Assembly (NCBI RefSeq): GCF_963676685.1 | Contig: NC_092347.1 | Location: 62,682,001 to 62,746,000 of the forward strand | Direction of reading: 5' to 3' | Length of the DNA: 64,000 nt | Source: Mytilus edulis | Taxonomy: Eukaryota | Part shown: one piece after another, positions 20,171 to 53,268 of the stretch | Numbering within the stretch: the stretch's first letter is position 1 | How the letters are laid out: each line of letters starts with the position of its first letter | The notes under the pieces: model-generated | What the model was told of the DNA's origin: nothing | The model's input: only the letters and a program-made list of their open reading frames with translations | Databases searched by the model: none | Position numbers and translations under genes: made by a program

Positions 20171-22707
20171 TTATTGTGTTTTACAAATCTTCTGAAAGTC
20201 ACAATCACCAAGTAGTTTATATGCCTGTTTGAAAGTCTGATAAAGACACACTTTGCTGCCACATGCAGGGATGTTAACTTCTTCTTCATTCACAAACATT
20301 TTAACGACGAAATTTCTGCTAACTCCACACTTGTAAAGGGCAGTACCTAAATTTGCAGAGAATGGACATGACTTGCTAACCCGAAATCGGCGGCTTTTGT
20401 TTGCTTCAAAATTGTTAGCTAAAAGTGTATTAGAGTCTTTGAATAGTCCAAATGCTGTATACACAGGAAGAAGCGTATAAGAATGCGCAAACTGAACATC
20501 AGCTACTGTGGTCCTGTAAAGGTAAAACATATAACACAAATATTAGACGCATAGCTAAGATTTTACATGAATAATGATCAATAATATCTCATACTTTCAC
20601 ATCTATACATCTATTTTTATTGTGCTGAAAGTGTTGAGATTTTTTTTTAAATGCTTCTCATCTTGGTCTAGAACAGTTTTCATGACTTCAGCCTATTTCC
20701 ATCGCAACTACTTGGTCATTTTTGATTTACGCCTACATTTTTGAAGCCTGTAGAGGATAACCGAACCAGAATCATTGTGAATAAATTTGATAGAAACTCC
20801 CATCCTGCATGTTAGAACTAGCATATATTTTTAAAAAGAAGTCTCCATAATTTGATATTTCCCATACTCACTCATTCTGATATGCAATGATGTCATCAAA
20901 TCGTTTTAACATGTGACTTGTAAAAGGACAGGACATTTGCCAGTTTATTGGGTAACCAAAGCCTCTCTGCCAGAAGTGCTGTAATGTAAACAATAGTCAT
21001 GCTGAAATAATATCACCATATATGATATTGTATGGCGGACAAAAACATTAGATTCTCTCATTCAAACCATAACATTCGAGTTATTTTTAAAACAGTATAT
21101 CCGTTTACATGTTATGTAAAAACTGTCTGAAATGAGCACTATCTGAACTTGCATGTGATATTTTGTTATTTTGTATACAAATTTTACTATAACATTATAA
21201 AGGAGATTGTGACATATACTTTATATATTTTTTTAAATATAGAACATGAATGTATCTAACAGCTGAAGGCGTGACACCAATTGCGCATGTCTCGCTGATG
21301 TAATTAAACTATATCGCCAGTGTTTGCAGGCTCCTTATTTCTTACGGATAAAACATTTTATATGACATCCTTCTTTGTTTCTTAAAGGATTTGAAAAAAG
21401 TATAATTCATTGCTAAAATTCACCGAACTTACCGATAAATCAAATAAGTAGTCTAACACTAAAAGATCGTCCAAAGTGAAAAAGCTGCACCAATCTGATT
21501 GGTTAAATATTCCAAGTTCGAAGGCACAAATCTGATGCATTGTTATGACTTGTTCTGAAATTCAAATGATGAACACTCCAAGTCACTATTTACTGACAAA
21601 AGGTGTATATCTTAAGTTTATGTTAATAAAGTAAGAAACAAGAACTAAATAAACGTCGAAATTTCAAATATATAGGATATATCTGAGCGAAAAACGGATG
21701 AAATATCAATCAATTAATTATAAGACGAGGACTGAAAGTCTAAAAAGGATAGTTTGTTAGATTGTTTTTATAACCTATTTCTTTTAATATTTATATTTGT
21801 TTCTGTTTCTGTTGTGTCCTTTTGAATATGTGTGATTATTTACATGTATACATAGATACGCAATTATAGATGTTTTAATAGAAAAAAGAAGATGTGGTAC
21901 AATTGCCAATTGGACAACTCTCCACAATAGACCAAAATGATAGAAATTAACAACTATAGGTTACCAAACGGCTTTCAACAATGAGCAATTAGTACCTGTC
22001 TTTAATTTTTGCACTCCGATTAGTTTCTTTATCTTATCAACTACTGTTCTCATCGTTGTTCCACCAACAAATGCATCATATTCCACATTTGATTTGTCAC
22101 TGTACGTTCTATACTTCTTACATTTTGAATAAAAACGGAGCCGTTGATCGTCCACTGTTGGAATTGGCATAGGTGCGTCAGCTGGCAAAGTTTCATTCAA
22201 ACTTTTGAAGAAAGCATCAAAACTTTGCCGAGTAACTTCCTTGCTTGTAATGGTATAATCTATAAGGTCCATTTTCCCTTCAAATAACTGTTTGAATTTC
22301 TCTCCGAATGTTCTACCTAGAGTTGTCGCTTCTTCATTTCCAAGTGAGGACATGGAATATGCATTTTCTTCTGCAAACGGGATTATCCACGTCTTCAAGA
22401 AGTTATGTTTCTTAACAACATCCGGGTACTGCTTCATCATTTTATGCAAATTCTTCATCCTCCGTATCCAGTAGAGTGATGGATATCTGGCAACATGTCT
22501 CATCAGCAGATTTAAGTTTACAATCTGACACACTTCACCATTGTACATGACAGTACTTTCGTCAGTTACTGTGTCATTGACGTATCTGTCTTTTGCCCAT
22601 GAATATGGTGTCATTACATTGAATACTGGTTTCGTGAAATTAGTCCCGCACTTAAGTTCTACCACAACAGTTGCTAAAAGTACGATTGACAAAATATAAG
22701 ATAGCAT
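20171..22707 (-). CDS. MINPP1: MINPP1-like histidine acid phosphatase paralog A, 427 aa, secreted, degenerate active site
   Basis: Exons 22707-21996, 21554-21433, 20978-20872, 20513-20171, GT-AG and in phase. Signal peptide; RHVARYP; LRFYxxC; ICAFELG..WC; GFGYPIN; FAHSYT; CPFSANL. Confidence 0.92.
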
Positions 22708-26081: not shown

Positions 26082-27595
26082 ATTTATCACATATTTAAGT
26101 TCTGCAGAATAGAGACACAAAGTTCAATTATTACAATTTAATGAAACATATAAACATGTAAAATTTTAAATTTTTTATCACAAAAGTGTCGTTAAGGACG
26201 CAATGACGTGACGTCATTTGGCACAATATCAATATCTTCTTTTTGCCCCGGGCAATTTTGAGGTTATTGCATATGCAAAAAAAAAAAAAAAACCCAACAA
26301 AAAACATAAACGTAATCATTTGTTCGTTCGTTCCTGATAAGAATATGAAAATATTTTTTATTGGACAGACGGGCAGACTATAATTAAAAAACAGAAAAGG
26401 GTTGCTATTATAATATTCCTAGAAAGGATAGAATATGTAGAATATGTATATTGTGCCACTTGCTGGATGATAAAAAAAACTTACTCCTTGAATATAAAAT
26501 TAACAAAAATCTAAGGGATAATCTATTCCAATTTTTTTCCCTCCTCATAATTCCATGCCCCTTAACCAAAAACAAAAAGTAAAACAAAATTTAATTTCAT
26601 GAATCATTGGAAATGTTAAAAATATTGGGTCCCGTTTATAAAACAGCATCTGCGCTAGCCAAGCAAGAGCGGGAGTGGATCGTACACTTGGCTAGCGAAG
26701 ATGATAAACAGTAATTAGAAATTTGTTTTTGTCACAAACTAATTATGTGTATATGACAACAAAGATATTATCATATATTGAATCATTGCAATATAGCCCT
26801 AGACCCCATTTTGATCATTTACAACCATTAGAGCAATGCTCGCAAGCGACAAAATGTATCCTTTGGGTGGTATTATGTATACAGTCTTAACCTTTCTTTC
26901 AGTGTTTTGTGAACTTGTTGGTTATGTCATAATTTGTTGGGTTTTTTTGCCTGACCGGTTGTCACTTTCGCGACATACGAACTTTGAATGTCCGCTTGTT
27001 TTCTTCTTTTTTTTTAATCGTTATTATCATCAGACGTATTCTACATTGTTATTGCCGGTGCAATCTAAAATGTATTACATTCCGTCTCGGAAAAAATAAA
27101 AATAATTGTCATATTTATTGCCTTATAAAGTGTAATAATCTTTGTCTCGGACCTCATGACTGTTGATTTGAGCCTAGGATTCATGGACATATCTCATCGG
27201 TATTGCTTATTCATTGGACTCAGATTTAGTATTACAGCCAATTTCATTGAGTGTGTATGCAAAGGAAATATCTTTGATTAGCTTGGTTGCTAGCTGGACC
27301 GTTAATGCAATCGGCTGTAATCGTTTTGATATGTTCTTTGCTATTGTATTTTTTTTTTTTGGTTTTGTACTTGAAGTTTCGTTACATATTTCAGTTGTAT
27401 TTATTAAACTCGAGAGTTTTTTCATATTAAAACAAAATTAAAGAAAAGGATGTTTAATCAAATTGCAATACTATTGTTCATGGACAAATTGTGGCTTAAT
27501 ATGATTGATCAGCAAAAATAGCGGCTTTAACAAGTATATTGTTTACTGATTTAAGGCCTAATGATTGGCTATTATAACAACCCTTTTTTAATATA

Positions 27596-27682
27596 ATACA
27601 TGTGTGTCATGTGCATCACATTATACATGTGTGTCGTGTGCATCACATTATACATGTGTGTCATGTGCATCACATTATACAT
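27596..27682. repeat. ~27-bp minisatellite x3 downstream of the native stop of paralog B
   Basis: atacatgtgtgtc(a/g)tgtgcatcacatt repeated. Confidence 0.8.
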
Positions 27683-27726
27683 ACTTTTGATTTGAGACAT
27701 TATACAAATTATTGCTATTGCTGTAA

Positions 27727-30700
27727 TTAGAGACATTGAACATATTTAAGCATCACTGTAATTATAACTAAGACAAGTGACAAAAAAGTATATGTGAATC
27801 GCACAGCAGAACTGGTATCACAAATCTTATCAAAGTCACATTTAGCAAGCTCTTTGTAGTAATGTGACAGTGGAAAAAGCAGCTTCGTTTAATACTTAGG
27901 ACTTTAATATTTAATTCTCAATTTTGATATTTTAGACATTAATTATCTGTGTTTTATTATTCATTATATTTTATAATTTCATTTCTATTTACATTTCGTA
28001 TCCAGGACTTAAAATCAACATTCTTTAATATGCATTTAATTCTCAGTTTGGACATTGAGTGACATGTTTCAATCGGTTAGCTAATTAGTGACATTTTACC
28101 TTATTCATAATGTATGTTCTTAATTGTCATAATCAGATTATCATTTAATATCTATTCTTCAAGTTCTAAAAATAGTTTAATCTTTGTCAGTGAACAATAT
28201 CACTCAAATTAATTGTTATTTGTTATGTCCATACTTGTTAATTCAATTGTGTATAAATACTTGTTTATAATTTCTATAAGCAAGATTTGGACTCAGGACT
28301 TTACACTGAACACAGTCCATCTGTAATAAAAGTAATAGTATTCCATGCTGAATTATTGGTTTATTCATCGCTAGTTCCAAAGTCTCAAGAGTTAGTTTTC
28401 ACCAGAGTTTCAGAGTTCAGAGTTCTCATTGCTATTCACAGCAATCGTTCGTTGTGTGATCAGGTGCATCACACAGTTTCAGTAGCAAGAGGCCATTCAG
28501 TCAGGCTCTTGTTACACACCCGACAAGCCACCCAGTTTCCCCGGTGACAGATTGGTGGACGACGACGGCGTGCTGACTTCTATGCTCAGCACACGATCCA
28601 GAGACCTCAAGCAGCCAAGCGAGTTCCCCAGATAAGTAGCGTAGACAATATTCAGCGATGGAGTACAGCTTTCGACCACAATGGAGACCATGGAACATCC
28701 AGTCAGGTTACAGTCCAGCATGTGGGAGATGCGGTAAATTCCATAAACATTATATTTGTAATTCTGTCAATCAAAGGTGCTTTTCATGTAGAAAATTCGG
28801 ACATTTCTCAAGTAAGTGTTTTTCAAAAGCAACAAAAGACAGACAAAGTACACCAGTTCATGTGAAATCTAGAAAACAAAAAGAACGTGATATAGCTAGA
28901 ATACAAAGCTATATTGAGCGCAAAAACATCATCCGAGCTTTACCGTTCTCAGGTATGAGAAATTCGGCCTTCATTCAACATTTGGACATTGCAAATGTGT
29001 TAAAAACAGAACTAAATAGTGTTAAGTCGAAATTATCAGAGGAAAAACGGAAAAATTCAGAACATCAACAGTACATTCAGGACTTAAAATTTCAAATGAA
29101 CCATCTAGAGAGTGTTAAATCCGAGAGAGATCAGTTTAAGCAAGAGCTTGCAAACATTAGTAAACATAAAGAAGAAAATGCCTCGCGTATAAACGTACAG
29201 GAATATGTGAATCAAATTCAAGAATTAAAGGACCAAGTAATTGAAAAAGACAAGACTGTGAAAATGGTGCAAGATCTTTACTTTATGCGTTCAACCGAAT
29301 TTACGGACGAAATAGAAACATTGAAAAATGAAAAATCAGACCTTCATTCTAAACTTCAATCTCAAGAAAATTCTGTCAAACAGCTGACAGAAGAACTGCA
29401 AAGCCTTCGGAATGAAAATTATATGTTGTCTTCCAGTCAACACCAACAGCGACCTAACTACAACAACAGACACTATAACAACCGCAGAGGAGGCCGATTT
29501 AGATAGTGCTAAGTCCGAGGACGGACTTAATTGGGAGGAGAGGCATATGTGACAGTGGAAAAAGCAGCTTCGTTTAATACTTAGGACTTTAATATTTAAT
29601 TCTCAATTTTGATATTTTAGACATTAATTATCTGTGTTTTATTATTCATTATATTTTATAATTTCATTTCTATTTACATTTCGTATCCAGGACTTAAAAT
29701 CAACATTCTTTAATATGCATTTAATTCTCAGTTTGGACATTGAGTGACATGTTTCAATCGGTTAGCTAATTAGTGACATTTTACCTTATTCATAATGTAT
29801 GTTCTTAATTGTCATAATCAGATTATCATTTAATATCTATTCTTCAAGTTCTAAAAATAGTTTAATCTTTGTCAGTGAACAATATCACTCAAATTAATTG
29901 TTATTTGTTATGTCCATACTTGTTAATTCAATTGTGTATAAATACTTGTTTATAATTTCTATAAGCAAGATTTGGACTCAGGACTTTACACTGAACACAG
30001 TCCATCTGTAATAAAAGTATTAGTATTCCATGCTGAATTATTGGTTTATTCATTCGCTAGTTCCAAAGTCTCAAGAGTTAGTTTTCACCAGAGTTTCAGT
30101 ATCAGAGTTCTCATTGCTATTCAGAGCAATCATTCGTTGTGTGATCAGGTGCATCACACAGTTTCAGTAACAAGAGGCCATTCAGTCAGGCTCTTGTTGC
30201 ACATCCTAACAAGTCACCCTTATTTCCCCGGTGACAGTAATTCTTCACATCGGAATATGAACATACCGTTCCACCACAAGCTGGTATATTAACTTGCTCT
30301 TCATTAACAAATATTTTAAATGCATGTTTTCCATTTGCTCCACATTTGTACAAACTAAATGCAATATTTGCAGAAAACGGTGTTATTTCACTCGTACTGA
30401 ATTTTCGATTGATATTAGCATCATAGTTTGCTGCTGTGAATGACTCAGAATCCTTGAACAATCCAAATGCAGTGAAGATAGGTAGAATCGTATCTTGATG
30501 TCCAAAGAAAATATCTATTGGTGGGATGCTGAAATTTAAAAGATAAAATATTATAAATAGTACAAGTGTGGACACAGATCAGTGTGGAAAGTATGTTTGG
30601 ATGTTTGACAGTGTTTTCTGACAAAAGTTCTCAGGTAAATAGTAGAAAGTAAAACATTTACATTAAAGTTAAATAAACAAATTTTTATTTTCATACGTAA

Positions 30701-33549
30701 AAAGATATATATATTTTTTTTAAGTTGAACAATTATCATGTAACATGATACAAATGACGTTGTTTGTTACACCATCATAACTATCAGAGCATGAATAGTG
30801 AAATTATGAAGCTCGTTACTGCAGTGTCGTCAATTCTCTAGATCTAGTCTTGGCTATATTATAATCGGCAATCCTCGGGTGTATCCGCTTATCTCCTTCT
30901 AAGGGTACGGAATCGTCAATCTAATTAAAAACCGATCTCTCATCGCTCCTGTTACTGATATGTCGCTCCCACGCGACATATCAGAAAACGGGAGCGATGA
31001 GAGATCGGTTTTTAATTAGATTGCGGAATGGGACGAGTTGTGGCGAATGAGCTATATTATTGACGTCTTTTGGAGTTTTATGAAGTACAAAAATGTACTA
31101 CATTATCTACTTCCCTGTCGATTTTTCAATTAACTAGTAATCTCCAAACGATTTCCATTGGAAATATCCAACTGCGTTCATGACTCTACGTTAAACTGAA
31201 TGTGTTAATGACATTTTCACCCTATTTGATATCATACACGTACTTTTTGTCTTAGTCTGGTGGTTGTTCTAAGTGCGTCTTATATACAGTACTTGCCTGT
31301 TTGGTTTTTCGGAGTTTGTTACAGCTTCTTCGAATCGTTCAAAAAGATAAGACGTATAAGGGCAAGTCTGCTGCCAATTGATAGGGTAGCCATATCCCGT
31401 TTTATAGTATTCCTGGAAAATTAGATAAATAGAAGTGTTATATGTGTGAGAACTGTGCTTCTGAACTGAAACTTAATTTTGGTTGAATATTTTGCAAATG
31501 AGTTTACATGGAAGCCCAAATAAAAAATATATATATAATGTTTTGTGTGTAAAGTGGGAAGACACTTAATTACGGTAGAAGCTACTGACCTTCAAATGTT
31601 TATTAGAGACCTTGATCGGGGATTGGAAAATTTTATTTTGTCTACTATTTGATTTTCTATACAGCATAAGGCTTTGTACACATGATTTTATGGTTTTGGT
31701 CAATGATAAATGAAACTTATTCTTTATATATTTTTTGCGACCGAATGATTTTCTATATTTATCATCACCGGGAACTCTAAAACCCAAATATTTGAATGTA
31801 TCAATAACTTTACTCGCTATATGTATACAAAATCTATGTAATTGATTAAAAGTTTTAAGTGCATTCTTTTATTTTTATTATAATGGATATTGTTTGATAT
31901 TTGGGGGCTAGTATACGCAGGAGTGTACGCCTTTTTCATAAATCAATTGGCGTTTTTGAGGGCATTTATTCTAAAAAGAGCTAAATCAATAATAATCTTC
32001 AATTAGGTAATTATTGAATATCAGATTGCAAAAATTGTCGACTAAATAATTAAATGCATGTTATACATGTATTACCTCTAAATCGTCCCAATAAGATATA
32101 ACTCGCAAATCATCAATATTAAAAAATTGGCACCAATCAGACTGTCCATTCAGACCAAGCTCAAAGGCACATATTTGGTGAATCACAAAGACGTCATCTG
32201 AAGAAATACAAGAAAAATTGTAGATTGTAGAATTAATAATACAAATATGATAAAGTGATATTAGATTCTGTTTGTTTGCAGAAGTCTCCTTATAATGTAT
32301 TTTTTTAAGGCGGTCAGTTGATACCATATACGATATAAACTTCTGGTAAGTATAGAGAAAGTTACACACGAGCATCAGAAACAGAAGTCGAATAGTTACC
32401 AAGACAACCTGAAAATATAAATCAAAATGACAAGAATGTCATCATAGTTACAAGAGGCCCAGATATATATCAAACATTTAATTGGAATGAATTTTTAAAC
32501 AATAACCAATCAATCGCAAAGTGCCATTCCTCACATTCTTTTCTATAAACTTTAGACCCTCAACTTTTCTCCAACTTTTTTTCGACCGGATGTCTCCCTT
32601 TTTAGTGTATGATAAAAAGGAAACTCAATAATGTTATTCCTCATGTAGTGTAGTTTGATAAGTTGTAGAGATGTCAAACATTACAATTATATGTCATTGA
32701 TATATGAACGTTAAAATAATACATAAACAAGGAGATTGTCAGTACAAATGTCTAAGTTATGGTATATTCGTTCACCTTAGTTGATCGTTACTTACCAAAA
32801 TCTATAGATATATTGGAGGCTCCAAGTTTTGTCTGTACTTTCTGGACAATATTACTTATCTTCGAACCAGCTTCAAATAAATTAGCTTCTTTTAATATCT
32901 CGTCGTTATCATCAACTTCTTTCACGTATTTTGAACAGCTTTCATAAAATCTGGTTTTCATATTATCTACTTTTGACCAGGGTGACCCGAGGCGGGGTGT
33001 GGGTCCACTGCTTGGAGATGCTTCATTTAATCCGCTGTAAAAGTTTTTAAAACTTGATTTCGTTCGATCTCTGAAAGATGTTGCGAATTTCACTTGATTA
33101 AGTTTTCCGTCCAATAATACTTTAAACCTGGTTCCGAATCGTTTACCTAATATCTTCATTTCTTCAACTCCAAGGGTACTGAGAAGGCCCTGTTGGTTCT
33201 CAAGGAATGGATTAGTCCACTTATTCATGAACGGGTATGTCGAGAGAATAGCTGCGTTAGCTGTTAGCTTAGAATGCAAAGCTGTCATTCGTTTGATCCA
33301 TTTCAAGGTAGGAAATCGAGAACCATGCCTAAGTAATATATTCAGGCCTTCCAGTTGACAAGTTTCCCCATTGAGAATTGCTGTACTGAATTCGTTTTCT
33401 TGAATAACGTCCGATATATTCCTTACCCAAAAATAAGGAGTTTTGGTGTTGAATAATGGTTTCTTAAACAGATTATCACTAAGCACAATTGCAAAAAGAA
33501 AGCTAAAAATGAATGTTGAAATAACAATTTGCAACAAACAAGCCATCAT
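27727..33549 (-). CDS. MINPP1: MINPP1-like paralog B; last exon split by an LTR element (444 aa with insertion, 471 aa pre-insertion)
   Basis: Exons 33549-32796, 32197-32076, 31412-31297 (GC donor) and 30528-30237, with an in-frame remainder at 27858-27727 beyond the element. Motifs RHGSRFP, GHQDT, TPFSANI. With the insertion, the frame stops at 30186 inside the LTR. Confidence 0.92.
27863..30236 (+). mobile_element. Non-autonomous LTR retrotransposon (Gypsy-like signals, no pol)
   Basis: LTRs 27863-28549 and 29548-30236 with TG..CA ends. 4-bp TSD GTAA at 27859-27862 and 30237-30240. PBS-like TGGTGGAC.. at 28553 and PPT GGGAGGAGAGG at 29533-29543. The LTR has TATAAATA at 28252 and AATAAA at 28325. 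Confidence 0.95.
28658..29506 (+). CDS. LTR-element ORF, 282 aa: tandem zinc knuckles, long coiled coil, RGG tail
   Basis: Intact ORF filling the 998-bp internal region. CGRCGKFHKHYIC and CFSCRKFGHFSSKC; E/K/Q/L heptad-rich region at about aa 110-260; ends NNRRGGRFR. Confidence 0.85.
   Translation: MEYSFRPQWRPWNIQSGYSPACGRCGKFHKHYICNSVNQRCFSCRKFGHFSSKCFSKATKDRQSTPVHVKSRKQKERDIARIQSYIERKNIIRALPFSGMRNSAFIQHLDIANVLKTELNSVKSKLSEEKRKNSEHQQYIQDLKFQMNHLESVKSERDQFKQELANISKHKEENASRINVQEYVNQIQELKDQVIEKDKTVKMVQDLYFMRSTEFTDEIETLKNEKSDLHSKLQSQENSVKQLTEELQSLRNENYMLSSSQHQQRPNYNNRHYNNRRGGRFR
30917..31023. mobile_element. Mutator-like MITE (copy 1)
   Basis: TIR caatctaattaaaaaccgatctctcatcgctcc; degenerate 9-bp TSD cggaatcgt/cggaatggg. 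Confidence 0.8.
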
Positions 33550-34579: not shown

Positions 34580-37500
34580 TATCAACATATTCTCTAGTGA
34601 ATTCCCATATTTAAGAAAAATGTCAACATATTCTCTAGTCAATTGCCAGGTGATCGCAATATTTGAGAGAATACTAACATTTTCCAGTCAATTGCCAGTT
34701 AATTGCCATATTTAAGAGAATGTCACCCTATTTTCTAGTAAAAATTGCCATATTTAAGAGAGTATCAACCTATTCTCTGGTCAATTGCCATATTTAAGAG
34801 AATGTCAACCTATTCTCTAGTAAAAATTGCCATATTTAAGAGAGTATCAACCTATTCTCTAGTCAATTGCCATATTTAAGAGAATGTCAACCTATTCTCT
34901 AGTAAAAATTGCCATATTTAAGAGAGTATCAACCTATTCTCTAGTCAATTGTCATATTTAAGAGAATGTCGCCCTATTTTCTAGTAAAAATTGCCATATT
35001 TAAGAGAGTATAAACCTATTCTCTAGTCAATTGCCATATTTAAGAGAGTATCAATCTATTCTCTAGTCAATTGCCATATTTAAGAGAATGTCACCCTATT
35101 TTCTAGTAAAAATTGCCATATTTCAGAGAGTATCAACCTATTCTCTAGTAAATTGCCATATTTAAGAGAATGTCAACCTATTTTCTAGTCAATTGTCATA
35201 TTTAAGAGAATGTCAACCTATTCTCTAGTCAGTTGCCATATTTAAGAGAATGTCAACCTATTCTCTAGTCAATTGCCATATTTAAGAGAATGTCAACCTA
35301 TTATCTAGTAAAAATTGACATATTTAAGAGAGTATCAACCTATTCTCTAGTCAATTGTCATATTTAAGAGAATGTCACCCTATTTTCTAGTAAAAATTGA
35401 CATATTTAAGAGAGTATCAACCTATTCTCTAGTCAATTGCCATATTTAAGAGAATGTCAACCTTTTCTCTAGTCAATTGTCATATTTAAGAGAATATCAA
35501 TCTATGCTCTAGTCAATTGTCATATTGTTAAAAGAGAATGTCAACCTATTCTCTAGTCAATTGTCATATTCAAGAGAATGTCAACCTATTCTCTAGTCAA
35601 TTGTCATATTTAAGAGAATATCAATCTATGCTCTAGTCAATTGCCATATTTTATAGAATGTCAACATATTCTCTAGTCAGTTGCCATATTTAAGAGAATG
35701 TCAACCTATTCTCTAGTCAATTGCCATATTTAAGAGAATGTCAACCTATTCTCTAGTCAATTGTCATATTTTTAAATAAAGAAAGTCAACCTATTCTCTA
35801 GTCAATTGTCATATTCAAGAGAATGTCAACCTATTCTCTAGTCAGTTGCTATATTTAAGAGAATGTCAACCTATTCTCTAGTCAGTTGCTATATTTAAGA
35901 AAATGTCAACCTATTCTCTAGTTAGTTGCCATATTTGAGAGAATGTTAACCTATTCTCTAGTCAATTGTCATATTTAAGAGAAAGTCAACCTATTCTCTA
36001 GTCAATTGTCATATTTAAGAGAAAGTCAACCTATGCTCTAGTCAATAGCCATATTCAAGAGAATTTCAACCTATTCTCTAGTCAGTTGCCATATTTAAGA
36101 GAATGTCAACCTATTCTCTAGTCAGTTGCCATATTTAAGAGAATGTCAACCTATTCTCTAGTCAGTTGCCATATTTAAGAGAATGTCAACCTATTCTCTA
36201 GTCAATTGTCATATTTAAGAGAAAGTCAACCTATTCTCTAGTCAATTGTCATATTTAAGAGAATGTCAACCTATTCTCTAGTCAATTGCCATATTTAAGA
36301 GAATGTCAACCTATTCTCTAGTCAGTTGCTATATTTAAGAAAATGTCAACCTATTCTCTAGTCAGTTGCCATATCTAAGAGAATGTCAACCTATTCTCTA
36401 GTCAATTGTCATATTCAAGAAAATTTCAACCTATTCTCTAGTCAGTTGCCATATTTAAGAGAATGTCAACCTTTCTTTAGTCAATTGTCATATTTGAGAG
36501 AAAATCAACCTATGCTCTAGTCAATAGCCATATTCAAGAGAATTTCAACCTATTCTCTAGTCAGTTGCCATATTTAAGAGAATGTCAACCTATTCTCTAG
36601 TCAGTTGCCATATTTAAGAGAATGGCAACCTATTCTCTAGTCAATTGTCATATTTATGAGAAAGTCAACATATTCTCTAGTCAATTGTCATATTTAAGAG
36701 AATGTCAACCTATTCTCTAGTCAGTTGCCATATTTAAGAGAATGTCAACCTATTCTCTAGTCAGTTACTATATTTAAGAAAATGTCAACCTATTCTCTAG
36801 TCAATTTTCATATTTAAGAGAATGTCAACATATTCTCTGGTCAGTTGCCATATTTAAGAGAATGTCACCCTATTCTCTAGTAAAAATGGCTATATTTAAG
36901 TGAATATCAACCTATTCTCTAGTCATTTGTCATATTTGAGAGAATGTCAACCTATTCTCTAGTCGGTTGCCATATTTAAGAGAATGTCAACCTTTTCTCT
37001 AGTCAATTGCCATATTTAAGAGAATGTCAACCTATTCTCTTGTCAGTTGTTATATTTAAGAAAATGTCAACCTATTCTCTAGTCAATTGTCATATTTAAA
37101 AGAATGTCAACCTATTCTGTAGTCAGTTAAATTGCCATATTTAAGAGAATGTCAACCTATTCTCTAGTCAATTGCCATATTCATGAGAATGTCAACATAT
37201 TCTCTAGTCAGTTGCCATATTTAAGAGAATGTCAACTTATTCTCTAGTCAATTGTCATATTTAAGAGAATTTCAACCTATTCTCTAGTCAATTGTCATAT
37301 TTAAGAGAATGTCAACCTCTTCTCTAGTCAGTTGGCATATTTAAGATAATGTCAACCTATTCTCTAGTCAATTGTAATATTTAAGAGAATGTCTACCTAT
37401 TCTCTATAGTCAATTGTCATATTTAAGAGAATGTCATCCTATTCTCTAGTCAGTTGCCATATTTAAGAGCATGTCAACCTATTCGCTTGTCAGTTGCCAT

Positions 37501-37795
37501 ATATACGAGAATGTCAACCTATTCTGTAGTCAGTTGCCATATTTAAGAGAATGTCAACCTATTCTCTAGTCAGTGAGTTGCCATATTTAAGAGAATGTCA
37601 ACCTATTCTCTAGTAAAAATTGCCATATTTAAGAGAATATCAACCTATTCTCTAGTCAATTGCCATACTTAAGAGAATGTCAACCTCTTCGCTAGTCAAT
37701 TGTCATATTTAAGAGAATGTCAACCTCTTCTCTAGTCAGTTGGCATATTTAAGATAATGTCAACCTATTCTCTAGTTAATTGCCATGTTTAAGAG
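34580..37795. repeat. 40-bp satellite, about 80 units
   Basis: Consensus gagaatgtcaacctattctctagtcaattgccatatttaa, with 41-bp variants (agtaaaaattgcc). Confidence 0.97.
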
Positions 37796-38184
37796 ATCTT
37801 TTGTGTTGTGTTACTTTAGATTAAGAAGAGAAAAAGAGGGAAAAAAATGACTAGCTCTTAAATGTTCAAACCGTATCAAAAATTTTCTCGTAAGGATGCA
37901 TATGTTTTTAATCAGCCACAATATGAAAAATAAGTAGAAGATGTAAAAGTATTTTTTTCTATCGATTATTTTAAAATATTAAGAACTTTTGTTTTATTCA
38001 ATAGAAACGTGTTTACAGTTATCATGTTCATTAAATCTGAAAGTCCCTGACAGTCTGTAATTGTCTAAAACCATTGTTTTCAATTTCCTTGAATAAGACG
38101 ATAAATGTTAATTGTTTTGCAATACTAACAACTCTTGAGTATATCCAAGCTGTAATGAATTTCATTATATGCTGTGTTTCTTTC

Positions 38185-41100
38185 CTATCCAAACGCTGGT
38201 TTGTGTGGATCATTTTGACATATCTGATCAAAATTACAGTCTGCTAGTTTACTGTAGAAGTTCTTGAAATCACCGTATCCACACACTGTATTCCCACAGC
38301 CTGGTATAATTACTGGATCTTCGTTAACAAACATTTGAATTACGTGATCACTGTTTCCGTCACATTTGTACAAAGCAACTGCTAAATTTGCCGAAAATGG
38401 ACCAATGATAGCACCGTGAAATGTTCGGTCTTTATTAACATCAAAGTTATCTGCTCTTAGCGGTTCAGCATCGTGAAATAAACCAAATGCGGTATAAACT
38501 GGAACAATTGTCTCGCTGTGACCAAATGAGATATCTAACTGTGGAACTCTGGAATTAGCAATATAAAGCCATAATAACAAAGTTGCGTAGAAATAAGCAA
38601 AATGCTCTCAAGAGCTTGTATAGCTTACAAGACATGTTTTGCCAAAATTAAATAGATACAATTAATGCAAAAATATTATTTGATAAAAATTTGATGAATT
38701 TATATCGTAATATTCTGAGCTGTTTAATTCTTGTCAGATTTGCAAGATGTAAGACAAGTTATGCACTTAACCTTTATGTTCTATTCACGGTAACAATGGC
38801 TGCCATTTTGTTTTTCTATCTGGGTAATCAAACTTTATACAAGATACCATAACAATCAATCCCCCAAAGTTTGGTTGAAATAGTTTCACGAGTTTCAGAG
38901 GAAAGGATTTTTAAAAAGTTTAAGAGGACGACGGACACCAAGTGTTGACTATACGAGTAAATATACGTTGATAGTGGGTTTTCCCATGGATGGAAACAAG
39001 TGGCTGTGCTATACAATACAATATTTTTATTTTCCAAATTAACGGACCCATTAAGAGCATAACATTAATTACAACATGACATAAACATTACAGAGTGATT
39101 AAAGAAACATAAAATAATAATTCAAATGCATGAGGAAAGAATCAGTGGTCAAGGGGAGATAATTTTGATATCTTTTAGAGTATTTAAGTAACTATTTTTC
39201 TGATTTTCTAAGTTGCAGGCCTTTATCGAGGTATGCACATAAAAAAGATAAAAATCTGCTATCTTCATTAATAATGATCCATGAAAAAAGATCTTTTCTA
39301 TTTGAATTATCTAAACTGGGGTATTTTTTTATATAATCAGTCACATCTCTTCTGAGGTTATTGTAAAGAGGGCATTTCAGAAGAAAGTGCATTTCATTTT
39401 CAATTCAATTTAAATTACAATTTAAACATATCCTCTCATGTCGAGGTAATATTTTATATTTACCACATACATTGGTAATTCGTTCATGTTTGCCAGTTTC
39501 TATTCTTAAACAGTGATTGCTGAGTCTGTATTTTGTTAACAAATTTTTTTTCGGGTGCTTTAAATCTAAATAATTTTTGTAGTTAAATGACCTTTTGAAT
39601 GAAAAATAAGTGTACAATTTGCCTTGATTCTGTAAATAAAAATCTCGCATTTTCTCCCAACAATTTTGAAAATTTAATTTGAGCTGTTTATTAGTAAATT
39701 TTTTAATTTATTTTTGCCTAAATTTTTACATATATTTAGGTCAATACCCAATTTTTTACTGTAGAAAATGATATTAGAGAGCCATGAATTATTGGAGCTA
39801 GTTTGAGCTTTACTCTCAATAATTTTTAACTCAGCATAAGCACTTTTGTTATAGATCACATAGCCTAGACACATAACCAGATGAGCTAAAAGAAATAACT
39901 TGACAAAAATCTTACAGTTTTTTCCCGATGAAGATAAATACCGAAAAGTGCCTCGGACTGTAGAAAATGATATTAGAGAGCCATGAATTATTGGAGCCAG
40001 TTTGAGCTTTACTCTCAATAATTTTTAACTCAGCATAAGCACTTTTGTTATAGATCACATAGCCTAGACACATAACCAGATGAGCTAAAAGAAATAACTT
40101 GACAAAAATCTTAGTTTTTTCCCGATGAAGATAAATACCGAAAAGTGCCTCGGACTGTAGAAAATGATATTAGAGAGCCATGAATTATTGGAGCCAGTTT
40201 GAGCTTTACTCTCAATAATTTTTAACTCAGCATAAGCACTTTTGTTATAGATCACATAGCCTAGACACATAACCAGATGAGCTAAAAGAAATAACTTGAC
40301 AAAAATCTTACAGTTTTTTCCCGATGAAGATAAATACCGAAAAGTGCCTCGGACTGTAGAAAATGATATTAGAGAGCCATGAATTATTGGAGCCAGTTTG
40401 AGCTTTACTCTCAATAATTTTTAACTCAGCATAAGCACTTTTGTTATAGATCACATAGCCTAGACACATAACCAGATGAGCTAAAAGAAATAACTTGACA
40501 AAAATCTTAGTTTTTTCCCGATGAAGATAAATACCGAAAAGTGCCTCGGACTGTAGAAAATGATATTAGAGAGCCATGAATTATTGGAGCCAGTTTGAGC
40601 TTTACTCTCAATAATTTTTAACTCAGCATAAGCACTTTTGTTATAGATCACATAGCCTAGACACATAACCAGATGAGCTAAAAGAAATAACTTGACAAAA
40701 ATCTTACAGTCGTTTCCCGATGAAGATAAATACCGAAAAGTGCCTCGGACGCATACAATCTATAATGTGGTTTCTCAATTTTTTAATGACTACTATATAT
40801 ACAGGAACTCTAATAAAGAAGTATCAAATTGTCAATTTCAAATAGAACTATTGACAAAACTTCTTTTATAAGACTTCCTTAAAATACTTCTTCTATAACA
40901 TTGTCAATTTCAAATAGAACCCTTAAAATATCTTTATCTGTAGAAAAAGTAAAATCCTCATATACTAGTAACATTTTCCTTTTCTGTATGTTTCTTCTAT
41001 GAATCGTGTGTTCGTACATTACTTATTTAATACAAATCTTTCACGTACACACTTCATTCAAATAAAATTCACAAGAATAGTAAGACCAAGAGGTTTGTTC

Positions 41101-43289
41101 GTCGATGTCATATTATAAATTCTATCGCGGACATATATTTTGTAACATTTAGACAATAGACTATTTATTACTTACTTATTATGCTGTAGACTGGCAGCTG
41201 AGACGGTTTGGTCGAACCTTTTAAACATGTATGAAGTAAATGGACAACTTTGTTTCCAATTGATAGGGTAAGCATATCCTTGCTCATAATAATCCTAAAA
41301 TAAACAACATGTTATAATTGCTCATAACCATAATTTTCGCGAAATAAATGATATTGCAAAACTGAAGTATTTATTGATTAAGTCATTTAATATTGTAATG
41401 CTGCTGAAGTTTTTCATTGCTGGATGCTTTAATCAGGAGCCTGTTGTTGAGAGACTGTTGTTTGTTGGTGTGGTTTATAGGTGTTTCTCGTTTCTTTTTT
41501 CTTTTAAACAGATTATAGTGTTGGTTTTCCTTTTTGAATTTGCTTAGGCTAATCATTTTGGGGCCCTTATTAGCTTAATTGTTGTTTGGTGTGAGCAAAG
41601 GATCCGTTTTAAAGGTCTGTAACCGTTAACTTTTTACACATTGTGACTTGAATGGAGAGTTGTGTCATTGGCAACCATACCACATCTCCTTTTCTGTACC
41701 AAGGACGTGAATCCCCTATCAACAAGCCAGCTTTGGACGGACGGAAAGACAGAAGGACGGTAAATGGTAACACTTAATGCTTCCTTCGACTTGCGGTGGG
41801 GGCATAAAAAGAGTATTCACATTTCCGACTCACGAAAGATAATTGATTAGTACTTACCTCTATATTTAGCAGGTAGTCAATGACGAGGAGATCATCTACG
41901 TCAAAAAGTCTACACCAATCAGATTTGTTGAACAGGCCCAACTCTAACGCACATATTTGGTTGATAACAACCACTTCAACTAAAAACGTAGGAAAGTAAA
42001 AATGAATACCTTTCACCATGAATTCATATATAAATGTTATCTACAGAAAGAAGCGGTACACTAAAAAAGGAATGTATACAGTACAGATATATGTGTCGTC
42101 CGTCCGTCTGTAAAATGCATCCAGTCAATATCTTTTAACAGTTTAGACGGGATAGGTCTAACTTATAATCATTTTTTATGCTGTTTTTGTGTGTATCGTG
42201 TATTTGGTTTCGGCATTTATTCACCTACCAATTTACATCAAAAATCCTTGCTGGCTTTCACATTTTTGAGTTTGGTCGTTTCTGCTGAAGGTTTACACAA
42301 AAAAAGTGTTTCATTTTATAAGATCCGTGACAGAAAAGTAGCAGTTAAATCAGCATTAAAAATATTTGAGGAAACTGATTTTGTTATTATAAAAATGCGG
42401 ACATATTCCTTTAAATGACAACCCTTTCTTTCAAGCCAAGCCAAAACACACACACACACACATACACACACACACAAACACGCAGGCTCTTTGAAGAAAC
42501 ACTTTCATATCCCCATTGCAGTTTAAAAGGGTCACCATTAACAGTTATTACGTAAAGCAAGAATATTGTACCTGCAGTCAAGTTGTAAAATCCTAGCTTA
42601 GTCTCAACTTTTCTGATCACGATTGTCATCTCCTTGCCACGAAGAAAGGCTTCATACTCGGTGGTAGTGTTATCATTTCCCTCTACCTCTACATTGTATT
42701 TGTGACAGTTATCGTAGAATCGAAGTTTTTCGTCGTCCACTTTAGCGTTTGGTTCCTGTGTGTTAGTTTGTAAAGTTTCGTTAAGTCCTTCATAGAAATA
42801 TTTGTAACTGTTCTGTGTTCGGTTTTTGTGAGTATATGAAAAGTTGATATGATTCAAGTTTCCTTGTAAGGAAGATTTAAATCGTCTTGCAAATCGATTA
42901 GCAAGTCTTAACATTTCGTATTCACCGACACGACTAAGGGTCCCTTCTTTAGTTTCCGGGAACGGATTGGACCACTGCTTAATAAATGGATACCGGGAAA
43001 TCACTTTCGAGTCGCTTGCTAATTTTATTTGCAATGCTGTCATCCACTTAATCCATTTTATTGTAGGGTATCTGGCGCCGTGTCTGAATAAAACATTCAG
43101 TCCTTCTAGTTGGCAAGTCTGGCCGTTATGGTTTAACGTATTATATTGATTGTCTGGTATACTTTCAGCTGGATCCTTCAACCAGAAATATAGAGTTTTT
43201 GTATTAAACAACGGTTTCATGAATGATTCATTTCCAAGCACAGTTGTACAAAATAAAAATAAATAAGCAAAATAAGTACACAGCTTCAT
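38185..43289 (-). CDS. MINPP1: MINPP1-like paralog C, 440 aa, secreted
   Basis: Exons 43289-42572, 41979-41858, 41294-41176, 38548-38185. Signal peptide MKLCTYFAYLFLFCTTVLG; RHGARYP; GHSET; GPFSANL. Confidence 0.94.
39192..39850 (-). mobile_element. Decayed LINE ORF2 C-terminal region in intron 3 of paralog C
   Basis: KYRLSNHCLRIETGKH..RICLNCNLN*IENEMHFLLKCPLYNNLR (C-terminal CCHC-type domain) with stops and frameshifts. Confidence 0.8.
39758..40748. repeat. Five-unit tandem array, units 199/197/199/197/199 bp
   Basis: Unit starts at 39758, 39957, 40154, 40353, 40550. Confidence 0.95.
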
Positions 43290-52100: not shown

Positions 52101-52990
52101 ACGGATTTGGCTATACTTTTTGGACCTTTTGGATTATAGATCTTCATCTTTTATATAAGCTTTGAATTTCACATATTTTTACCACGAGCATCACTGAAGA
52201 GACATGTATTGTCGAAATGCGCATCTGGTGCAAGAAAATTGGTACCGTTAATTTTATTATCATATCATACAAAATTACCTGGTTCGATTTCAGAAGTTCC
52301 AATTTTCTGTCTTACTTTGTTGACAACAGATTTCATTTCATCTCCATTTAAGAATTTGTAAAATTCAGTCAAAGTTTCATTGTTTTGGTCAACCTCTTTT
52401 ATGTATTTACCACAGTAGTCGTAATACCTCAGTAATCTATCGTCTGTAGATGTTGTTATTGACTGTTTACCCATAACATTCTCTAAACCCAGACAAAACT
52501 TGCTTTTGCTTTGCTTTGTCCTATCTTTCGACGTCGTTTCAAACATAATCTTGCCAGCATTTTTACGTACATTGTTTCTAAATCGTTTGACAAATCTTTC
52601 CCCGAGCTGAAGCATTTCTTCATCTCCAACGACAGACTGTTGGTACTGTTTGCTTTTTGGAAATGGGGTTCTCCAGTTACCTATAAACGGATGTTTTGTA
52701 ACAACTAATGAATCCCCTCTTAGAACTGTGGAAATGTTATCCATTTTTTGTATCCATGGTAGAGATGGGTATCTGGCAGCGTGTCTGAATAAGTAATGAA
52801 AATTTGTAATTTGACACGAATGTCCTCCATACATAAATGATCCATCTCTATTCTCCGGAATAGTTTCATTGATACTTTTTACCCAAAAATACGGAGTCAT
52901 AGCATTAAAAATAGGCTTCTTTAAATTGTCTCCAGTAATCACTTTGGTAATTGAAAATAACATAACTGTCAAAATAATGATATATTCCAT
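46142..52990 (-). CDS. MINPP1: MINPP1-like paralog D, 461 aa, hydrophobic GPI-type C-terminus
   Basis: Exons 52990-52279, 51133-51012, 49604-49495, 46583-46142. Motifs RHAARYP and GHTDT; ends ..TGNSFIMSSDLLLVLLLTYLSCVMILG*. Confidence 0.94.
48197..48508. mobile_element. Partial inverted copy (one end) of the same Harbinger-like element
   Basis: Reverse complement of about 2290-2508 joined directly to 3224-3285; preceded by TAA. Confidence 0.8.
50854..50994. mobile_element. Mutator-like MITE (copy 2)
   Basis: Same TIR; perfect 9-bp TSD CATGATTAA. Confidence 0.85.
51832..51875 (+). ncRNA. Minimal type I hammerhead ribozyme
   Basis: GCAUCA-CUGAAGA-GAC(auguauu)GUC-GAAA-UGCGCA-UC^UGGUGC. Stems I and II pair; predicted cleavage after C51869. 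Confidence 0.88.
52188..52231 (+). ncRNA. Minimal type I hammerhead ribozyme (second copy)
   Basis: Identical to 51832-51875; predicted cleavage after C52225. Confidence 0.88.
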
Positions 52991-53268
52991 TTCTAGAAAA
53001 TGTTGAATATACACATTAAATTCCAATGAAAGACTGCACTTACCTACCTGATGCCGAGCACATATAAATGTGTAAAGTAAACATGAACTGTAACATGTGC
53101 TGTCGGCAGTTTAAAAGTTGTTGTTTTCAATTAATGTCCCATTAATTTTGTATCATTGTTTATCATAAGTCAGGGATTTTGATACCACATATTACTTAAA
53201 ATATCTCACAGAATGAGATTGTTTCAAAGATAGAAAGATTTTGGCAGAAGTTTGGCTTTAAGTATAGA

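What the first reader, a model, noticed from the sequence alone, without database searches (positions are those of the whole stretch)
27863..30236. Pol-less LTR retroelement whose only gene is a zinc-knuckle-first, coiled-coil, RGG protein
Seen: a complete 2.37-kb element with ~688-bp LTRs, a 4-bp TSD, a PBS-like site and a PPT. Its 1-kb interior is filled by one intact 282-aa ORF. Known: Gag normally runs capsid then nucleocapsid, with the knuckles C-terminal, and the CX2CX3HX4C + CX2CX4HX4C pair resembles Mag-type Gypsy nucleocapsid. Here the knuckles come first, I see no capsid-like region, and a ~150-aa coiled coil and an RGG tail follow. Inference: this is not a simple deletion derivative but a parasitic family with its own RNA-binding oligomeric adaptor, which may help its RNA get packaged by a helper retrotransposon. 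This is the best candidate for an undescribed system in the window.
Basis: partly seen in the sequence, partly recalled or inferred. Interest (0 to 1): 0.85.

Follow-up and report, generated by a model that had tools for sequence, protein, structure and literature searches.

The report
Gag-only LTR retrotransposon in a mussel
A real 2.4-kb mobile element sits inside a mussel gene and carries one gene only, for an RNA-binding, rod-forming protein that is not a normal virus-like shell protein. It belongs to a large, unnamed family spread across several bivalve orders, and it must borrow its copying enzymes from another, still unidentified element.

Summary
Window 27863-30236 is a complete LTR element:
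- LTRs of 687 and 689 bp with TG..CA ends.
- A GTAA target-site duplication.
- A TGG-initiated PBS-like site and a purine tract.
- One intact 282-aa ORF filling the 998-bp interior.

It is inserted antisense in the last coding exon of one gene of a tandem histidine-phosphatase array. Intact paralogues act as empty sites.

The protein has two N-terminal NC-type CCHC knuckles, a conserved basic helix with an LPF motif, about 150 residues of coiled coil and a short RG-rich tail. No capsid fold was found by Pfam, a PDB profile search, two AlphaFold models or Foldseek.

It belongs to a multi-copy family with many Mytilus copies at dispersed loci, plus deep lineages in Mytilus, Pinctada and Tegillarca. 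Every relative is 376 aa or shorter, and none is a polyprotein. Two gene models from other copies read across the ORF-PPT-LTR and LTR-PBS-ORF junctions.

Best reading: a non-autonomous, TR-GAG-like LTR retrotransposon with a non-canonical, ORF1p-like nucleic-acid-binding protein, mobilised in trans.

Untested: the helper, the packaging role, the "Mag-type" origin, dN/dS, and Repbase/Dfam status. No DNA of other copies could be fetched.

Verdict: new variant of a known kind, moderate interest.

The parts
27859..27862 (.). Left copy of the 4-bp target-site duplication (GTAA)
   Evidence: The same 4 bp follow the 3' LTR. The paralogous exons are uninterrupted at this point.
27863..28549 (+). 5' LTR (687 bp), TG..CA ends. 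The U3/R part is AT-rich (25% GC) and the last 216 bp are 44% GC.
28252..28257 (+). TATAAA box in the LTR (candidate promoter; the only one in the LTR)
   Evidence: Its function is inferred.
28325..28330 (+). AATAAA polyadenylation signal in the LTR. It marks the approximate R/U5 border. All differences between the LTRs lie downstream of it.
28428..28548 (+). U5 region with three to four predicted hairpins that are kept in both LTR versions
   Evidence: The two substitutions in stems both preserve the pair, and the others fall in loops or unpaired columns. The sample is small and the structure was predicted from the same two sequences.
28553..28570 (+). PBS-like site starting with TGG, 3 nt after the 5' LTR
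   Evidence: A gene model from a distant family member (P0119) reads through a similar LTR-end/TGGTGG/leader stretch. The tRNA partner was not identified; there is no tRNA gene in the window.
28550..28657 (+). 5' leader between the LTR and the start codon
   Evidence: The fold of R-U5-leader is not significantly stable (z = -1.43).
28658..29506 (+). The single ORF: 282 aa plus a TAG stop
   Evidence: Homologues.
28721..28819 (+). Two CCHC zinc knuckles (residues 22-34 and 41-54), a retroviral NC-type module
   Evidence: All Cys/His are invariant in 40 family members. The family profile matches EIAV NC p11 (2bl6) at E = 2.8e-7 across both knuckles, and matches Gag 6t61 and HIV-1 NC.
28865..28960 (+). 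Conserved basic helix (residues 70-94) and invariant LPF loop (residues 95-101). This is the best-conserved part outside the knuckles.
   Evidence: R77, R81, P96, F97 invariant. AF2 predicts a helix at 72-94.
28988..29440 (+). Coiled-coil region (residues 111-261)
   Evidence: AF2 predicts helices at 111-177 and 180-261 with pLDDT above 90. The Pinctada relative has one 150-residue helix. A 3.5-residue periodicity is present. The profile hits tropomyosin and myosin.
29441..29503 (+). Disordered basic Asn/Arg/Gly-rich tail ending in an RG-rich motif
   Evidence: pLDDT is below 50. The tail is conserved across lineages.
29533..29543 (+). Polypurine tract (11 nt), 4 nt upstream of the 3' LTR
   Evidence: The stretch 29508-29549 is identical at the amino-acid level in a read-through gene model of a M. 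coruscus copy (P0013).
29548..30236 (+). 3' LTR (689 bp)
30237..30240 (.). Right copy of the target-site duplication (GTAA)
30241..30575 (-). Upstream part of the interrupted last coding exon of a His_Phos_2 (MINPP1-like) gene, the host target
   Evidence: Pfam PF00328, E = 2.2e-8. Colinear with the paralogues.
27731..27862 (-). Downstream part of the same exon (last ~43 codons plus stop), cut off by the insertion

Best explanation
[quoted passage not shown] It has kept the cis-acting parts: LTRs with a promoter and poly(A) signal, TG..CA ends, a PBS and a PPT. It carries one gene and no protease, reverse transcriptase, RNase H or integrase.

The gene product is not a capsid-type Gag. It consists of an N-terminal two-knuckle nucleocapsid-like RNA-binding module, a conserved basic helix with an LPF motif, a long coiled coil for self-association, and a short basic RG-rich tail.

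**Shown.**
- The anatomy of the element.
- That it is an insertion.
- The protein architecture and the lack of a capsid fold.
- Membership of a multi-copy, dispersed, deeply diverged bivalve family of stand-alone proteins.

**Inferred.**
- The ~1.7-1.8-kb LTR-to-LTR transcript is translated into this protein.
- The protein oligomerises on and coats or chaperones its own RNA, much as LINE ORF1p or retroviral NC do.
- The resulting RNP is reverse-transcribed and integrated by enzymes, and probably a particle, supplied in trans by an unidentified autonomous LTR retrotransposon. That helper would produce 4-bp duplications and recognise the same LTR ends.
For: **Structure and insertion.**

**No pol.** The interior is 998 bp, of which 849 bp are the ORF.

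**NC-type knuckles.** The family profile matches EIAV NC at E = 2.8e-7 and also matches HIV-1 NC. 23 of 40 members hit zf-CCHC, and none hits any Gag-capsid, PR, RT or IN family.

**Coiled coil and no globular capsid domain.**
- AF2 of the window protein: pLDDT 82.7, with helices of 67 and 82 residues.
- AF2 of a Pinctada relative at 32% identity: one 150-residue helix.
- Foldseek finds only knuckle-sized matches.
- Heptad periodicity is present.

**Family.**
- 35 hits at 53-97% identity, 32 of them named Mytilus proteins, each on a single contig.
- Several are fused by gene callers to unrelated host genes: tetraspanin, EGF, STAND NTPase, ankyrin, MFS, COR, and a Pao peptidase fragment.
- 103 representatives were found, 57 with E below 1e-10. 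All are 376 aa or shorter and none is a polyprotein.
- Each named genome holds several copies: Pinctada imbricata has 9 proteins in two clusters, and M. coruscus has at least 5 deep lineages, one of them with 7 near-identical copies.
- The Cys/His, R77, R81, P96 and F97 are invariant at 20% mean identity.

**Same junctions in other copies.**
- P0013 (M. coruscus) fuses the ORF to the exact 3'UTR-PPT-LTR start.
- P0119 reads LTR end, TGGTGG, leader, then ORF.

**Transcript size.** Many unnamed ENA/Logan contigs carrying family members are 0.9-2.5 kb long. That fits a transcript of the expected ~1.75 kb. This is a hint only.
Against: - So different TSDs, LTRs around other copies, dN/dS and copy number were not measured.
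- No autonomous partner is known. None lies in the window.
- The PBS was not matched to a tRNA.
- Expression, RNA binding, oligomerisation and trans-mobilisation are all untested.
- Gene callers split gag and pol of autonomous elements into separate proteins. 'All relatives are short' therefore does not by itself exclude autonomous relatives.
- The two LTRs differ only in U5, which ordinary reverse transcription followed by neutral decay does not predict.
Confidence: 0.6

Rival explanations
1. This is a deletion derivative of an autonomous lineage. The ORF is the ordinary (if unusual) gag of a so far unrecognised autonomous LTR retrotransposon group of bivalves. This copy, and the M. coruscus copy behind P0013, simply lost pol. 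The Pol-less form is not the propagating unit.
For: - Gag and pol are often called as separate proteins, so the short length of all relatives is compatible.
- The ORF is the first gene after the PBS, where gag sits.
- The knuckles are NC-type.
- Internal-deletion derivatives are common among LTR elements (PMC13570524).
Against: - The ORF stop lies 26 nt before the PPT, and the same stop-PPT-LTR junction is found in a copy from another species.
- No family member carries any PR, RT or IN Pfam domain, and no polyprotein appears even as a gene-model fusion. The one Pao-peptidase fusion has pol upstream of the ORF's C-terminus, which is the wrong order.
- The C-terminal RG tail followed directly by a stop is conserved across deep lineages.
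- The short ENA/Logan contigs are all 2.5 kb or less.
Confidence: 0.2
2. The element has a chimeric origin. An LTR element (TRIM/LARD-like) captured a foreign nucleic-acid-binding gene, for example a LINE ORF1-like or host CCHC/coiled-coil gene. The protein would then not be a Gag descendant at all.
For: - No capsid fold and the knuckle-first order are both unlike Gag.
- CX2CX3HX4C and CX2CX4HX4C knuckles and coiled coils occur in LINE ORF1 proteins.
Against: - There is no RRM, CTD, PHD or esterase domain, so it fits none of the five ORF1 types.
- No LINE ORF1 or single-copy host gene appeared among 103 relatives.
- The best structural and sequence matches of the knuckle pair are retroviral NC.
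Confidence: 0.1
3. The protein is an interfering or domesticated factor. It would work against a retroelement, as a dominant-negative NC-like binder in the manner of Gag-derived restriction factors, or for the host. The LTR context would be incidental to its maintenance.
For: - There is strong long-term conservation of a small protein.
- NCBI's pipeline annotates one copy as a normal gene.
Against: - Many copies per genome sit at different loci. Frameshifted and truncated copies lie beside intact ones.
- Several deep lineages coexist in one genome.
- This copy disrupts a host exon.
- All of this is the pattern of a selfish family rather than a host gene.
Confidence: 0.05

Closest known systems
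[quoted passage not shown]
   Same: A short (under 4 kb) LTR element with LTRs, PBS and PPT and a single ORF in the gag position. It has no PR, RT or IN, is multi-copy, and is presumed to be mobilised in trans. Its autonomous partner is often untraceable.
   Different: TR-GAG ORFs are recognisable Copia or Gypsy Gag proteins with a capsid domain (UBN2/Retrotrans_gag) followed by a C-terminal knuckle. Here there is no capsid domain and the knuckles are N-terminal, followed by a coiled coil. The host is an animal (bivalve) rather than a plant.
Mammalian non-autonomous LTR elements (MaLR, ETn, VL30; PMC6466679)
   Same: Animal LTR elements that lack pol and depend on autonomous relatives (ERV-L, MusD, MLV).
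   Different: Those carry only traces of retroviral coding sequence or none. They do not maintain a conserved protein under selection, whereas here the ORF is intact and conserved across bivalve orders.
Retroviral/retroelement nucleocapsid (EIAV p11, HIV-1 NCp7)
   Same: Two CCHC knuckles with a short linker and basic flanks. The family profile matches EIAV NC at E = 2.8e-7 across both knuckles.
   Different: NC is the C-terminal cleavage product of a capsid-containing Gag. Here the module opens the protein, and no MA, CA or protease site context exists.
LINE ORF1 proteins (types I and II of Khazina and Weichenrieder; PMC4120745, PMC5940361)
   Same: A functional analogy: a small element-encoded protein combining a coiled-coil oligomerisation domain with nucleic-acid-binding modules and basic disordered ends. 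ORF1p is thought to coat its own RNA in cis. CCHC knuckles with the same spacings occur in the Jockey, I and Nimb clades.
   Different: There is no RRM or CTD, the domain order is reversed (knuckles first), and no sequence homology was detected. The element is an LTR element with a TSD, PBS and PPT, not a poly(A) LINE.
biv-TRIM (PMC6934838)
   Same: A non-autonomous LTR-type element family of bivalves, including Mytilus, with no identified autonomous partner.
   Different: biv-TRIM is under 1 kb, non-coding and lacks a canonical PBS. The element here is 2.4 kb, coding, and has a TGG-initiated PBS-like site.

Membership tests
LTR retrotransposon (structural definition) | Two long direct terminal repeats with TG..CA ends | tested here: met
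   LTRs of 687 and 689 bp, 97.7% identical, starting TGTGACA and ending GGTGACA.
LTR retrotransposon (structural definition) | Target-site duplication of 4-6 bp, and an uninterrupted empty site | tested here: met
   GTAA lies on both sides. Three paralogous exons in the window are continuous across the insertion point.
LTR retrotransposon (structural definition) | PBS complementary to a tRNA 3' end just after the 5' LTR | tested here: inconclusive
   A TGG-initiated 16-18-nt candidate lies 3 nt after the LTR. A similar stretch occurs in a distant family member. No host tRNA set was available and there is no tRNA gene in the window.
LTR retrotransposon (structural definition) | Polypurine tract just before the 3' LTR | tested here: met
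   An 11-nt purine run lies at 29533-29543, 4 nt from the LTR. It is conserved in the M. coruscus copy behind P0013.
TR-GAG | Under 4 kb, with a single ORF and no PR, RT, RH or IN | tested here: met
   The element is 2,374 bp with one 282-aa ORF. The interior leaves 149 bp outside the ORF.
TR-GAG | The ORF is similar to a Copia or Gypsy GAG capsid domain (selection criterion in PMC4350172) | tested here: not met
   No Gag or capsid Pfam family is hit by the window protein or by any of 40 members. Foldseek and the PDB profile search find no capsid match.
TR-GAG | At least two copies in the genome | tested here: met
   Dozens of protein models on different Mytilus contigs. DNA of those copies was not seen.
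Ty3/Gypsy, Mag clade | Placement by RT/IN phylogeny, with Gag running capsid then NC | not testable with these tools
   The element has no pol. Knuckle spacing is not diagnostic, since the same spacings occur in LINE ORF1. No Gypsy protein is among the relatives.
Troyka superfamily (PMC12440569) | 3-bp TSD and CG..CG termini | tested here: not met
   The TSD is 4 bp and the termini are TG..CA.
Retroviral-type Gag | Capsid (CA NTD/CTD) all-helical globular fold | tested here: not met
   Two AF2 models show only a knuckle module plus helices of 67-150 residues. Foldseek finds no capsid hit.
Retroviral-type Gag | NC module with CCHC knuckles | tested here: met
   The family profile matches EIAV and HIV NC. 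The Cys/His are invariant.
LINE ORF1p types I-II | RRM domain (with C-terminal CCHC, or with a coiled coil upstream and a CTD) | tested here: not met
   No RRM or Transposase_22 hit. AF2 shows no beta-sheet domain. Type definitions are from PMC4120745.

The most novel reading that the evidence does not exclude
Pteriomorph bivalves (at least Mytilida, Pteriida and Arcida) harbour an old, still active superfamily of Pol-less LTR retrotransposons. As a lineage, these elements have replaced capsid-type Gag with a knuckle-first, coiled-coil, RG-tailed RNA chaperone, an LTR-element counterpart of LINE ORF1p. They persist as long-term obligate parasites of autonomous LTR elements. The invariant basic-helix/LPF motif would be the docking site for the helper's particle or enzymes.
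Probability: 0.35. Interest if true: 0.65.

Novelty: new variant of a known kind. Interest (0 to 1): 0.5.

Why it matters
Non-autonomous LTR elements that keep a protein are known almost only from plants, and there the protein is an ordinary capsid-type Gag.

Here an animal family keeps a conserved protein built from an NC module and a coiled coil, with no capsid. That would be a natural case for asking what the minimal protein contribution of a parasitic retroelement to its own mobilisation is: RNA marking, chaperoning, or particle entry. It would also test whether LTR and non-LTR elements converged on the same coiled-coil-plus-RNA-binder solution.

There is a practical point too. These roughly 280-aa 'CCHC-type domain-containing' or 'Rad50-like' proteins are mis-annotated as host genes, and fused to real genes, in Mytilus and Pinctada annotations. 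This copy also shows the family can hit coding exons.

Tried and rejected
1. **Fetching DNA of other copies.** As a result there is no TSD census, no LTRs of other copies, no dN/dS and no helper search.
2. **tRNA match for the PBS.** There is no tRNA gene in the window and no host tRNA set, so this is left open.
3. **Rfam scan of the window.** Nothing found.
4. **Fold of R-U5-leader.** Not more stable than shuffles (z = -1.43), so no claim of a packaging structure is made.
5. **Troyka superfamily.** Rejected on TSD length and termini.
6. **'Mag-type' knuckle signature.** Rejected as diagnostic.
7. **Capsid hidden in the helical region.** Rejected.
8. **Profile search for named or domain-bearing kin.** It found only the same family and gene-model chimeras.
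9. **Dating from LTR identity.** Abandoned, because divergence is confined to U5.
10. **Careful ML tree.** It did not finish. Only a quick tree was obtained, and it is used only to say that M. coruscus holds several deep lineages.
11. **Third protein search.** The third homologous-protein search (domains apart) was not spent. Its length window cannot reach polyproteins, and the length-unrestricted phmmer search had already covered them.
12. **Whole His_Phos_2 gene model.** The spliced gene model was not searched as a whole. Exons were searched one by one by reference.
Full report
**1. What is there**

Window 27863-30236 is bounded by two direct repeats, 27863-28549 (687 bp) and 29548-30236 (689 bp).
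- They begin TGTGACA and end GGTGACA (TG..CA).
- They are flanked by GTAA on both sides, at 27859-27862 and 30237-30240.
- Three nucleotides after the 5' repeat comes TGGTGGACGACGACGG, a PBS-like site.
- Four nucleotides before the 3' repeat lies an 11-nt purine run (29533-29543).
- The repeat has a single TATAAA (28252) and a single AATAAA (28325) in the right order for U3/R/U5.
- The 998-bp interior consists of a 108-nt leader, one ORF (28658-29506, 282 aa) and 41 nt.
- Nothing else in the window resembles the LTR or the interior.

**2. It is an insertion, and where**

The flanks belong to the last coding exon of a histidine-phosphatase (Pfam His_Phos_2, MINPP1-like) gene on the minus strand. 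This gene is one of at least four tandem paralogues in the window. When the element and one GTAA are removed in a local script, the minus-strand frame runs on without a stop. It is then colinear with the last exons of the paralogues at 20.2, 38.2 and 46.2 kb, in both DNA and protein. These paralogues serve as empty sites and confirm the element borders to the base.

The insertion is antisense to the gene and cuts off its last ~43 codons. I searched the exons one by one by reference. I did not search the joined gene model.

**3. The protein**

Pfam gives only sub-threshold zf-CCHC hits and a scatter of coiled-coil families. The family profile built from 40 members gives more:
- It matches the two-knuckle nucleocapsid of EIAV (2bl6, E = 2.8e-7, both knuckles).
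- It matches the NC part of a Gag polyprotein (6t61) and HIV-1 NC.
- Over the rest of the protein it matches tropomyosin, myosin rods and similar proteins.

AlphaFold2 with that alignment (mean pLDDT 82.7) predicts:
- a knuckle module at residues 20-56;
- a basic helix at 72-94;
- a loop carrying an invariant LPF;
- a short helix, then helices at 111-177 and 180-261;
- a disordered tail.

A Pinctada relative, 32% identical, gives the same plan with one 150-residue helix. The helical part has a 3.5-residue hydrophobic period and no Pro or Gly in 151 residues.

Foldseek against the PDB finds nothing at E of 0.001 or better, and its four weak hits include three retroviral NC peptides. Against BFVD the best hits are CCHC proteins over 41-59 columns.

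One correction: the 'RGG tail' is a short RG-rich end.

**4. It is a family**

*Close copies.* A word-indexed search found 35 proteins at 53-97% identity, 32 of them named proteins of M. coruscus, M. galloprovincialis and M. edulis, each cluster on a single contig.
- Several full-length models (279-288 aa) share the same start and end.
- Others are truncated or frameshifted.
- Some are models in which gene callers fused a piece of this ORF to tetraspanin, EGF, STAND-NTPase, ankyrin, MFS, COR or Pao-peptidase sequence.

That is the pattern of a dispersed repeat. The closest named proteins are from M. edulis (99% over half the length, and 92%), so the window is probably from the M. edulis complex.

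*Distant relatives.* A length-unrestricted phmmer search of 1.84 billion representatives gave 103 relatives, 57 of them below 1e-10. All are 54-376 aa and none is a polyprotein.
- Named ones come from M. coruscus, Pinctada imbricata (two clusters, nine proteins on several chromosomes) and Tegillarca granosa.
- The rest are unnamed ENA or Logan contigs.
- M. coruscus alone holds at least five lineages only ~30% identical to each other, one of them with seven near-identical copies.

*Conservation.* Across 40 members (mean identity 20%) the eight Cys/His, R77, R81, P96 and F97 are invariant. The N-terminal nonapeptide, the basic helix and the RG-rich end recur. Open frames of the same length and plan at ~25-35% identity cannot be neutral. 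Purifying selection on the protein is therefore inferred, although dN/dS could not be computed.

**5. Is the Pol-less form the unit?**

Two gene models that overrun the ORF give indirect evidence.
- **P0013 (M. coruscus).** It consists of ORF residues 1-171 joined by an internal deletion to 14 residues. Those 14 residues are a 100% match to window 29508-29549 read in another frame. That stretch covers the 3' UTR, the PPT and the first two bases of the LTR, followed by the LTR's TGA. So another copy, probably in a different species, has the same ORF-PPT-LTR junction.
- **P0119 (unnamed, 37% identical in the ORF).** It reads through a stretch matching the window's LTR end, the TGGTGG of the PBS and the leader, at about 50% identity. 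It then runs into the ORF at a similar distance.

In addition, the unnamed short contigs carrying family members are all 0.6-2.5 kb. That would fit LTR-to-LTR transcripts of about 1.75 kb, but I could not inspect them.

These points favour a propagating Pol-less family over a one-off deletion. They do not prove it.

**6. Mechanism**

*Shown:* a non-autonomous LTR element with one conserved NC-like, coiled-coil protein.

*Inferred from established retroelement biology:*
- Transcription starts in the 5' LTR and ends at the poly(A) site of the 3' LTR.
- The ORF is translated from this genomic RNA.
- The protein binds RNA through its knuckles, basic helix and RG tail, and multimerises through the coiled coil.
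- Reverse transcription (tRNA-primed at the PBS, plus-strand priming at the PPT) and integration with a 4-bp duplication are carried out by the enzymes of an autonomous LTR element.

Why a parasite keeps such a protein is open. The options, in my order of preference:
1. cis-marking and chaperoning of its own RNA, as LINE ORF1p does;
2. an adaptor that brings the RNA into the helper's particle, with the invariant LPF loop as the obvious candidate surface;
3. interference with the helper.

**7. Comparison with what is known**

- **TR-GAG of plants** is structurally the closest kind (PMC4350172, PMC13570524). However, TR-GAG is defined by an ORF similar to Gag capsid domains, a feature that was tested here and not met.
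- **MaLR, ETn and VL30** are animal non-autonomous LTR elements, but they maintain no conserved protein (PMC6466679).
- **LINE ORF1p** is the best functional analogy. None of its five types fits, since there is no RRM, CTD, PHD or esterase domain (PMC4120745).
- **Troyka** is excluded by its TSD and termini.
- **The 'Mag-type' idea** is untestable without pol, and the knuckle spacing is shared with LINE ORF1 proteins.
- **Bivalve literature.** I found no description of such elements in the bivalve TE papers I could search. Repbase and Dfam were not available, so prior cataloguing cannot be excluded.

**8. An unexplained detail**

All 16 differing columns between the two LTRs lie in the last 216 bp, downstream of the AATAAA (U5). 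The first 472 bp are identical. If differences fell evenly along the LTR, the chance of this would be about 9e-9. Few of the changes are at CpG sites.

In the 130 bp before the LTR end, three to four predicted hairpins are kept in both versions. The two substitutions that fall in stems both preserve pairing. That sample is small, and the structure was predicted from the same two sequences.

This looks more like one U5 having been replaced from another working family member, by conversion or recombination, or like an assembly chimera, than like decay in place. It makes LTR-based dating meaningless here. The identical U3/R and the hit in a coding exon suggest a young insertion.

**9. Verdict**

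- Novelty: a new variant of a known kind, namely an animal gag-position-only LTR parasite with a non-capsid, ORF1p-like protein that is old and widespread in pteriomorph bivalves.
- Interest is moderate (0.5). It would rise if the Pol-less form is shown to be the long-term replicating unit and the protein's role in trans-mobilisation is defined.

**10. Housekeeping**

The alignment tools print a consensus line of their own accord, and I did not use it.
- One bench step was referred.

Noticed in passing
window 20171-22707, 27731-33549, 38185-43325, 46142-53026 (minus strand): A tandem array of at least four His_Phos_2 (MINPP1-like histidine acid phosphatase) genes. First exons lie at 21961-22707, 32788-33549, 42411-43325 and 52265-53026, with matching last exons. 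The LTR element truncates the second paralogue by ~43 codons, removing a conserved Cys pair and a hydrophobic C-terminus.
   Followed up: partly
window 28335-28549 versus 30020-30236: All 16 differences between the two LTRs are confined to U5, while U3 and R (472 bp) are identical. Stem substitutions in the predicted U5 hairpins preserve pairing. This suggests conversion or recombination with another family member, or an assembly chimera.
   Followed up: partly
window 34697-37796: A 40-bp satellite array with 76.6 copies and 87% matches, lying between two phosphatase paralogues.
   Followed up: no
window 39758-40750: A tandem repeat of 197-bp units (5 copies, 98% matches; also reported as 396 bp x 2.5). 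It overlaps ORFs of 109-114 aa that have no Pfam hit.
   Followed up: no
window 27596-27682: A 27-bp tandem repeat (3.2 copies, 96% matches) in the 3' flank of the interrupted exon. It produces the spurious 54-aa ORF at 27572-27736.
   Followed up: no
window 57590-58006 (+): An exon encoding the start of an intermediate-filament rod domain (Pfam Filament, E = 8e-24).
   Followed up: no
proteins P0074, P0093, P0105, P0117, P0122 (distant family members, unnamed ENA/Logan sources): A more distant branch of the protein family carries a third CCHC-like knuckle near the C-terminus, after the coiled coil. P0105's cluster has 12 members on Mb-scale contigs of an unnamed eukaryote assembly.
   Followed up: no
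proteins P0009, P0017, P0029, P0030, P0031, P0034, P0175-P0177 (public Mytilus annotations): Copies of this element's ORF are annotated as host genes ('Rad50 ATPase-like') or fused in gene models to tetraspanin, EGF, STAND NTPase, ankyrin, MFS, COR and Pao-peptidase sequences. These look like annotation artefacts caused by the element family.
   Followed up: partly
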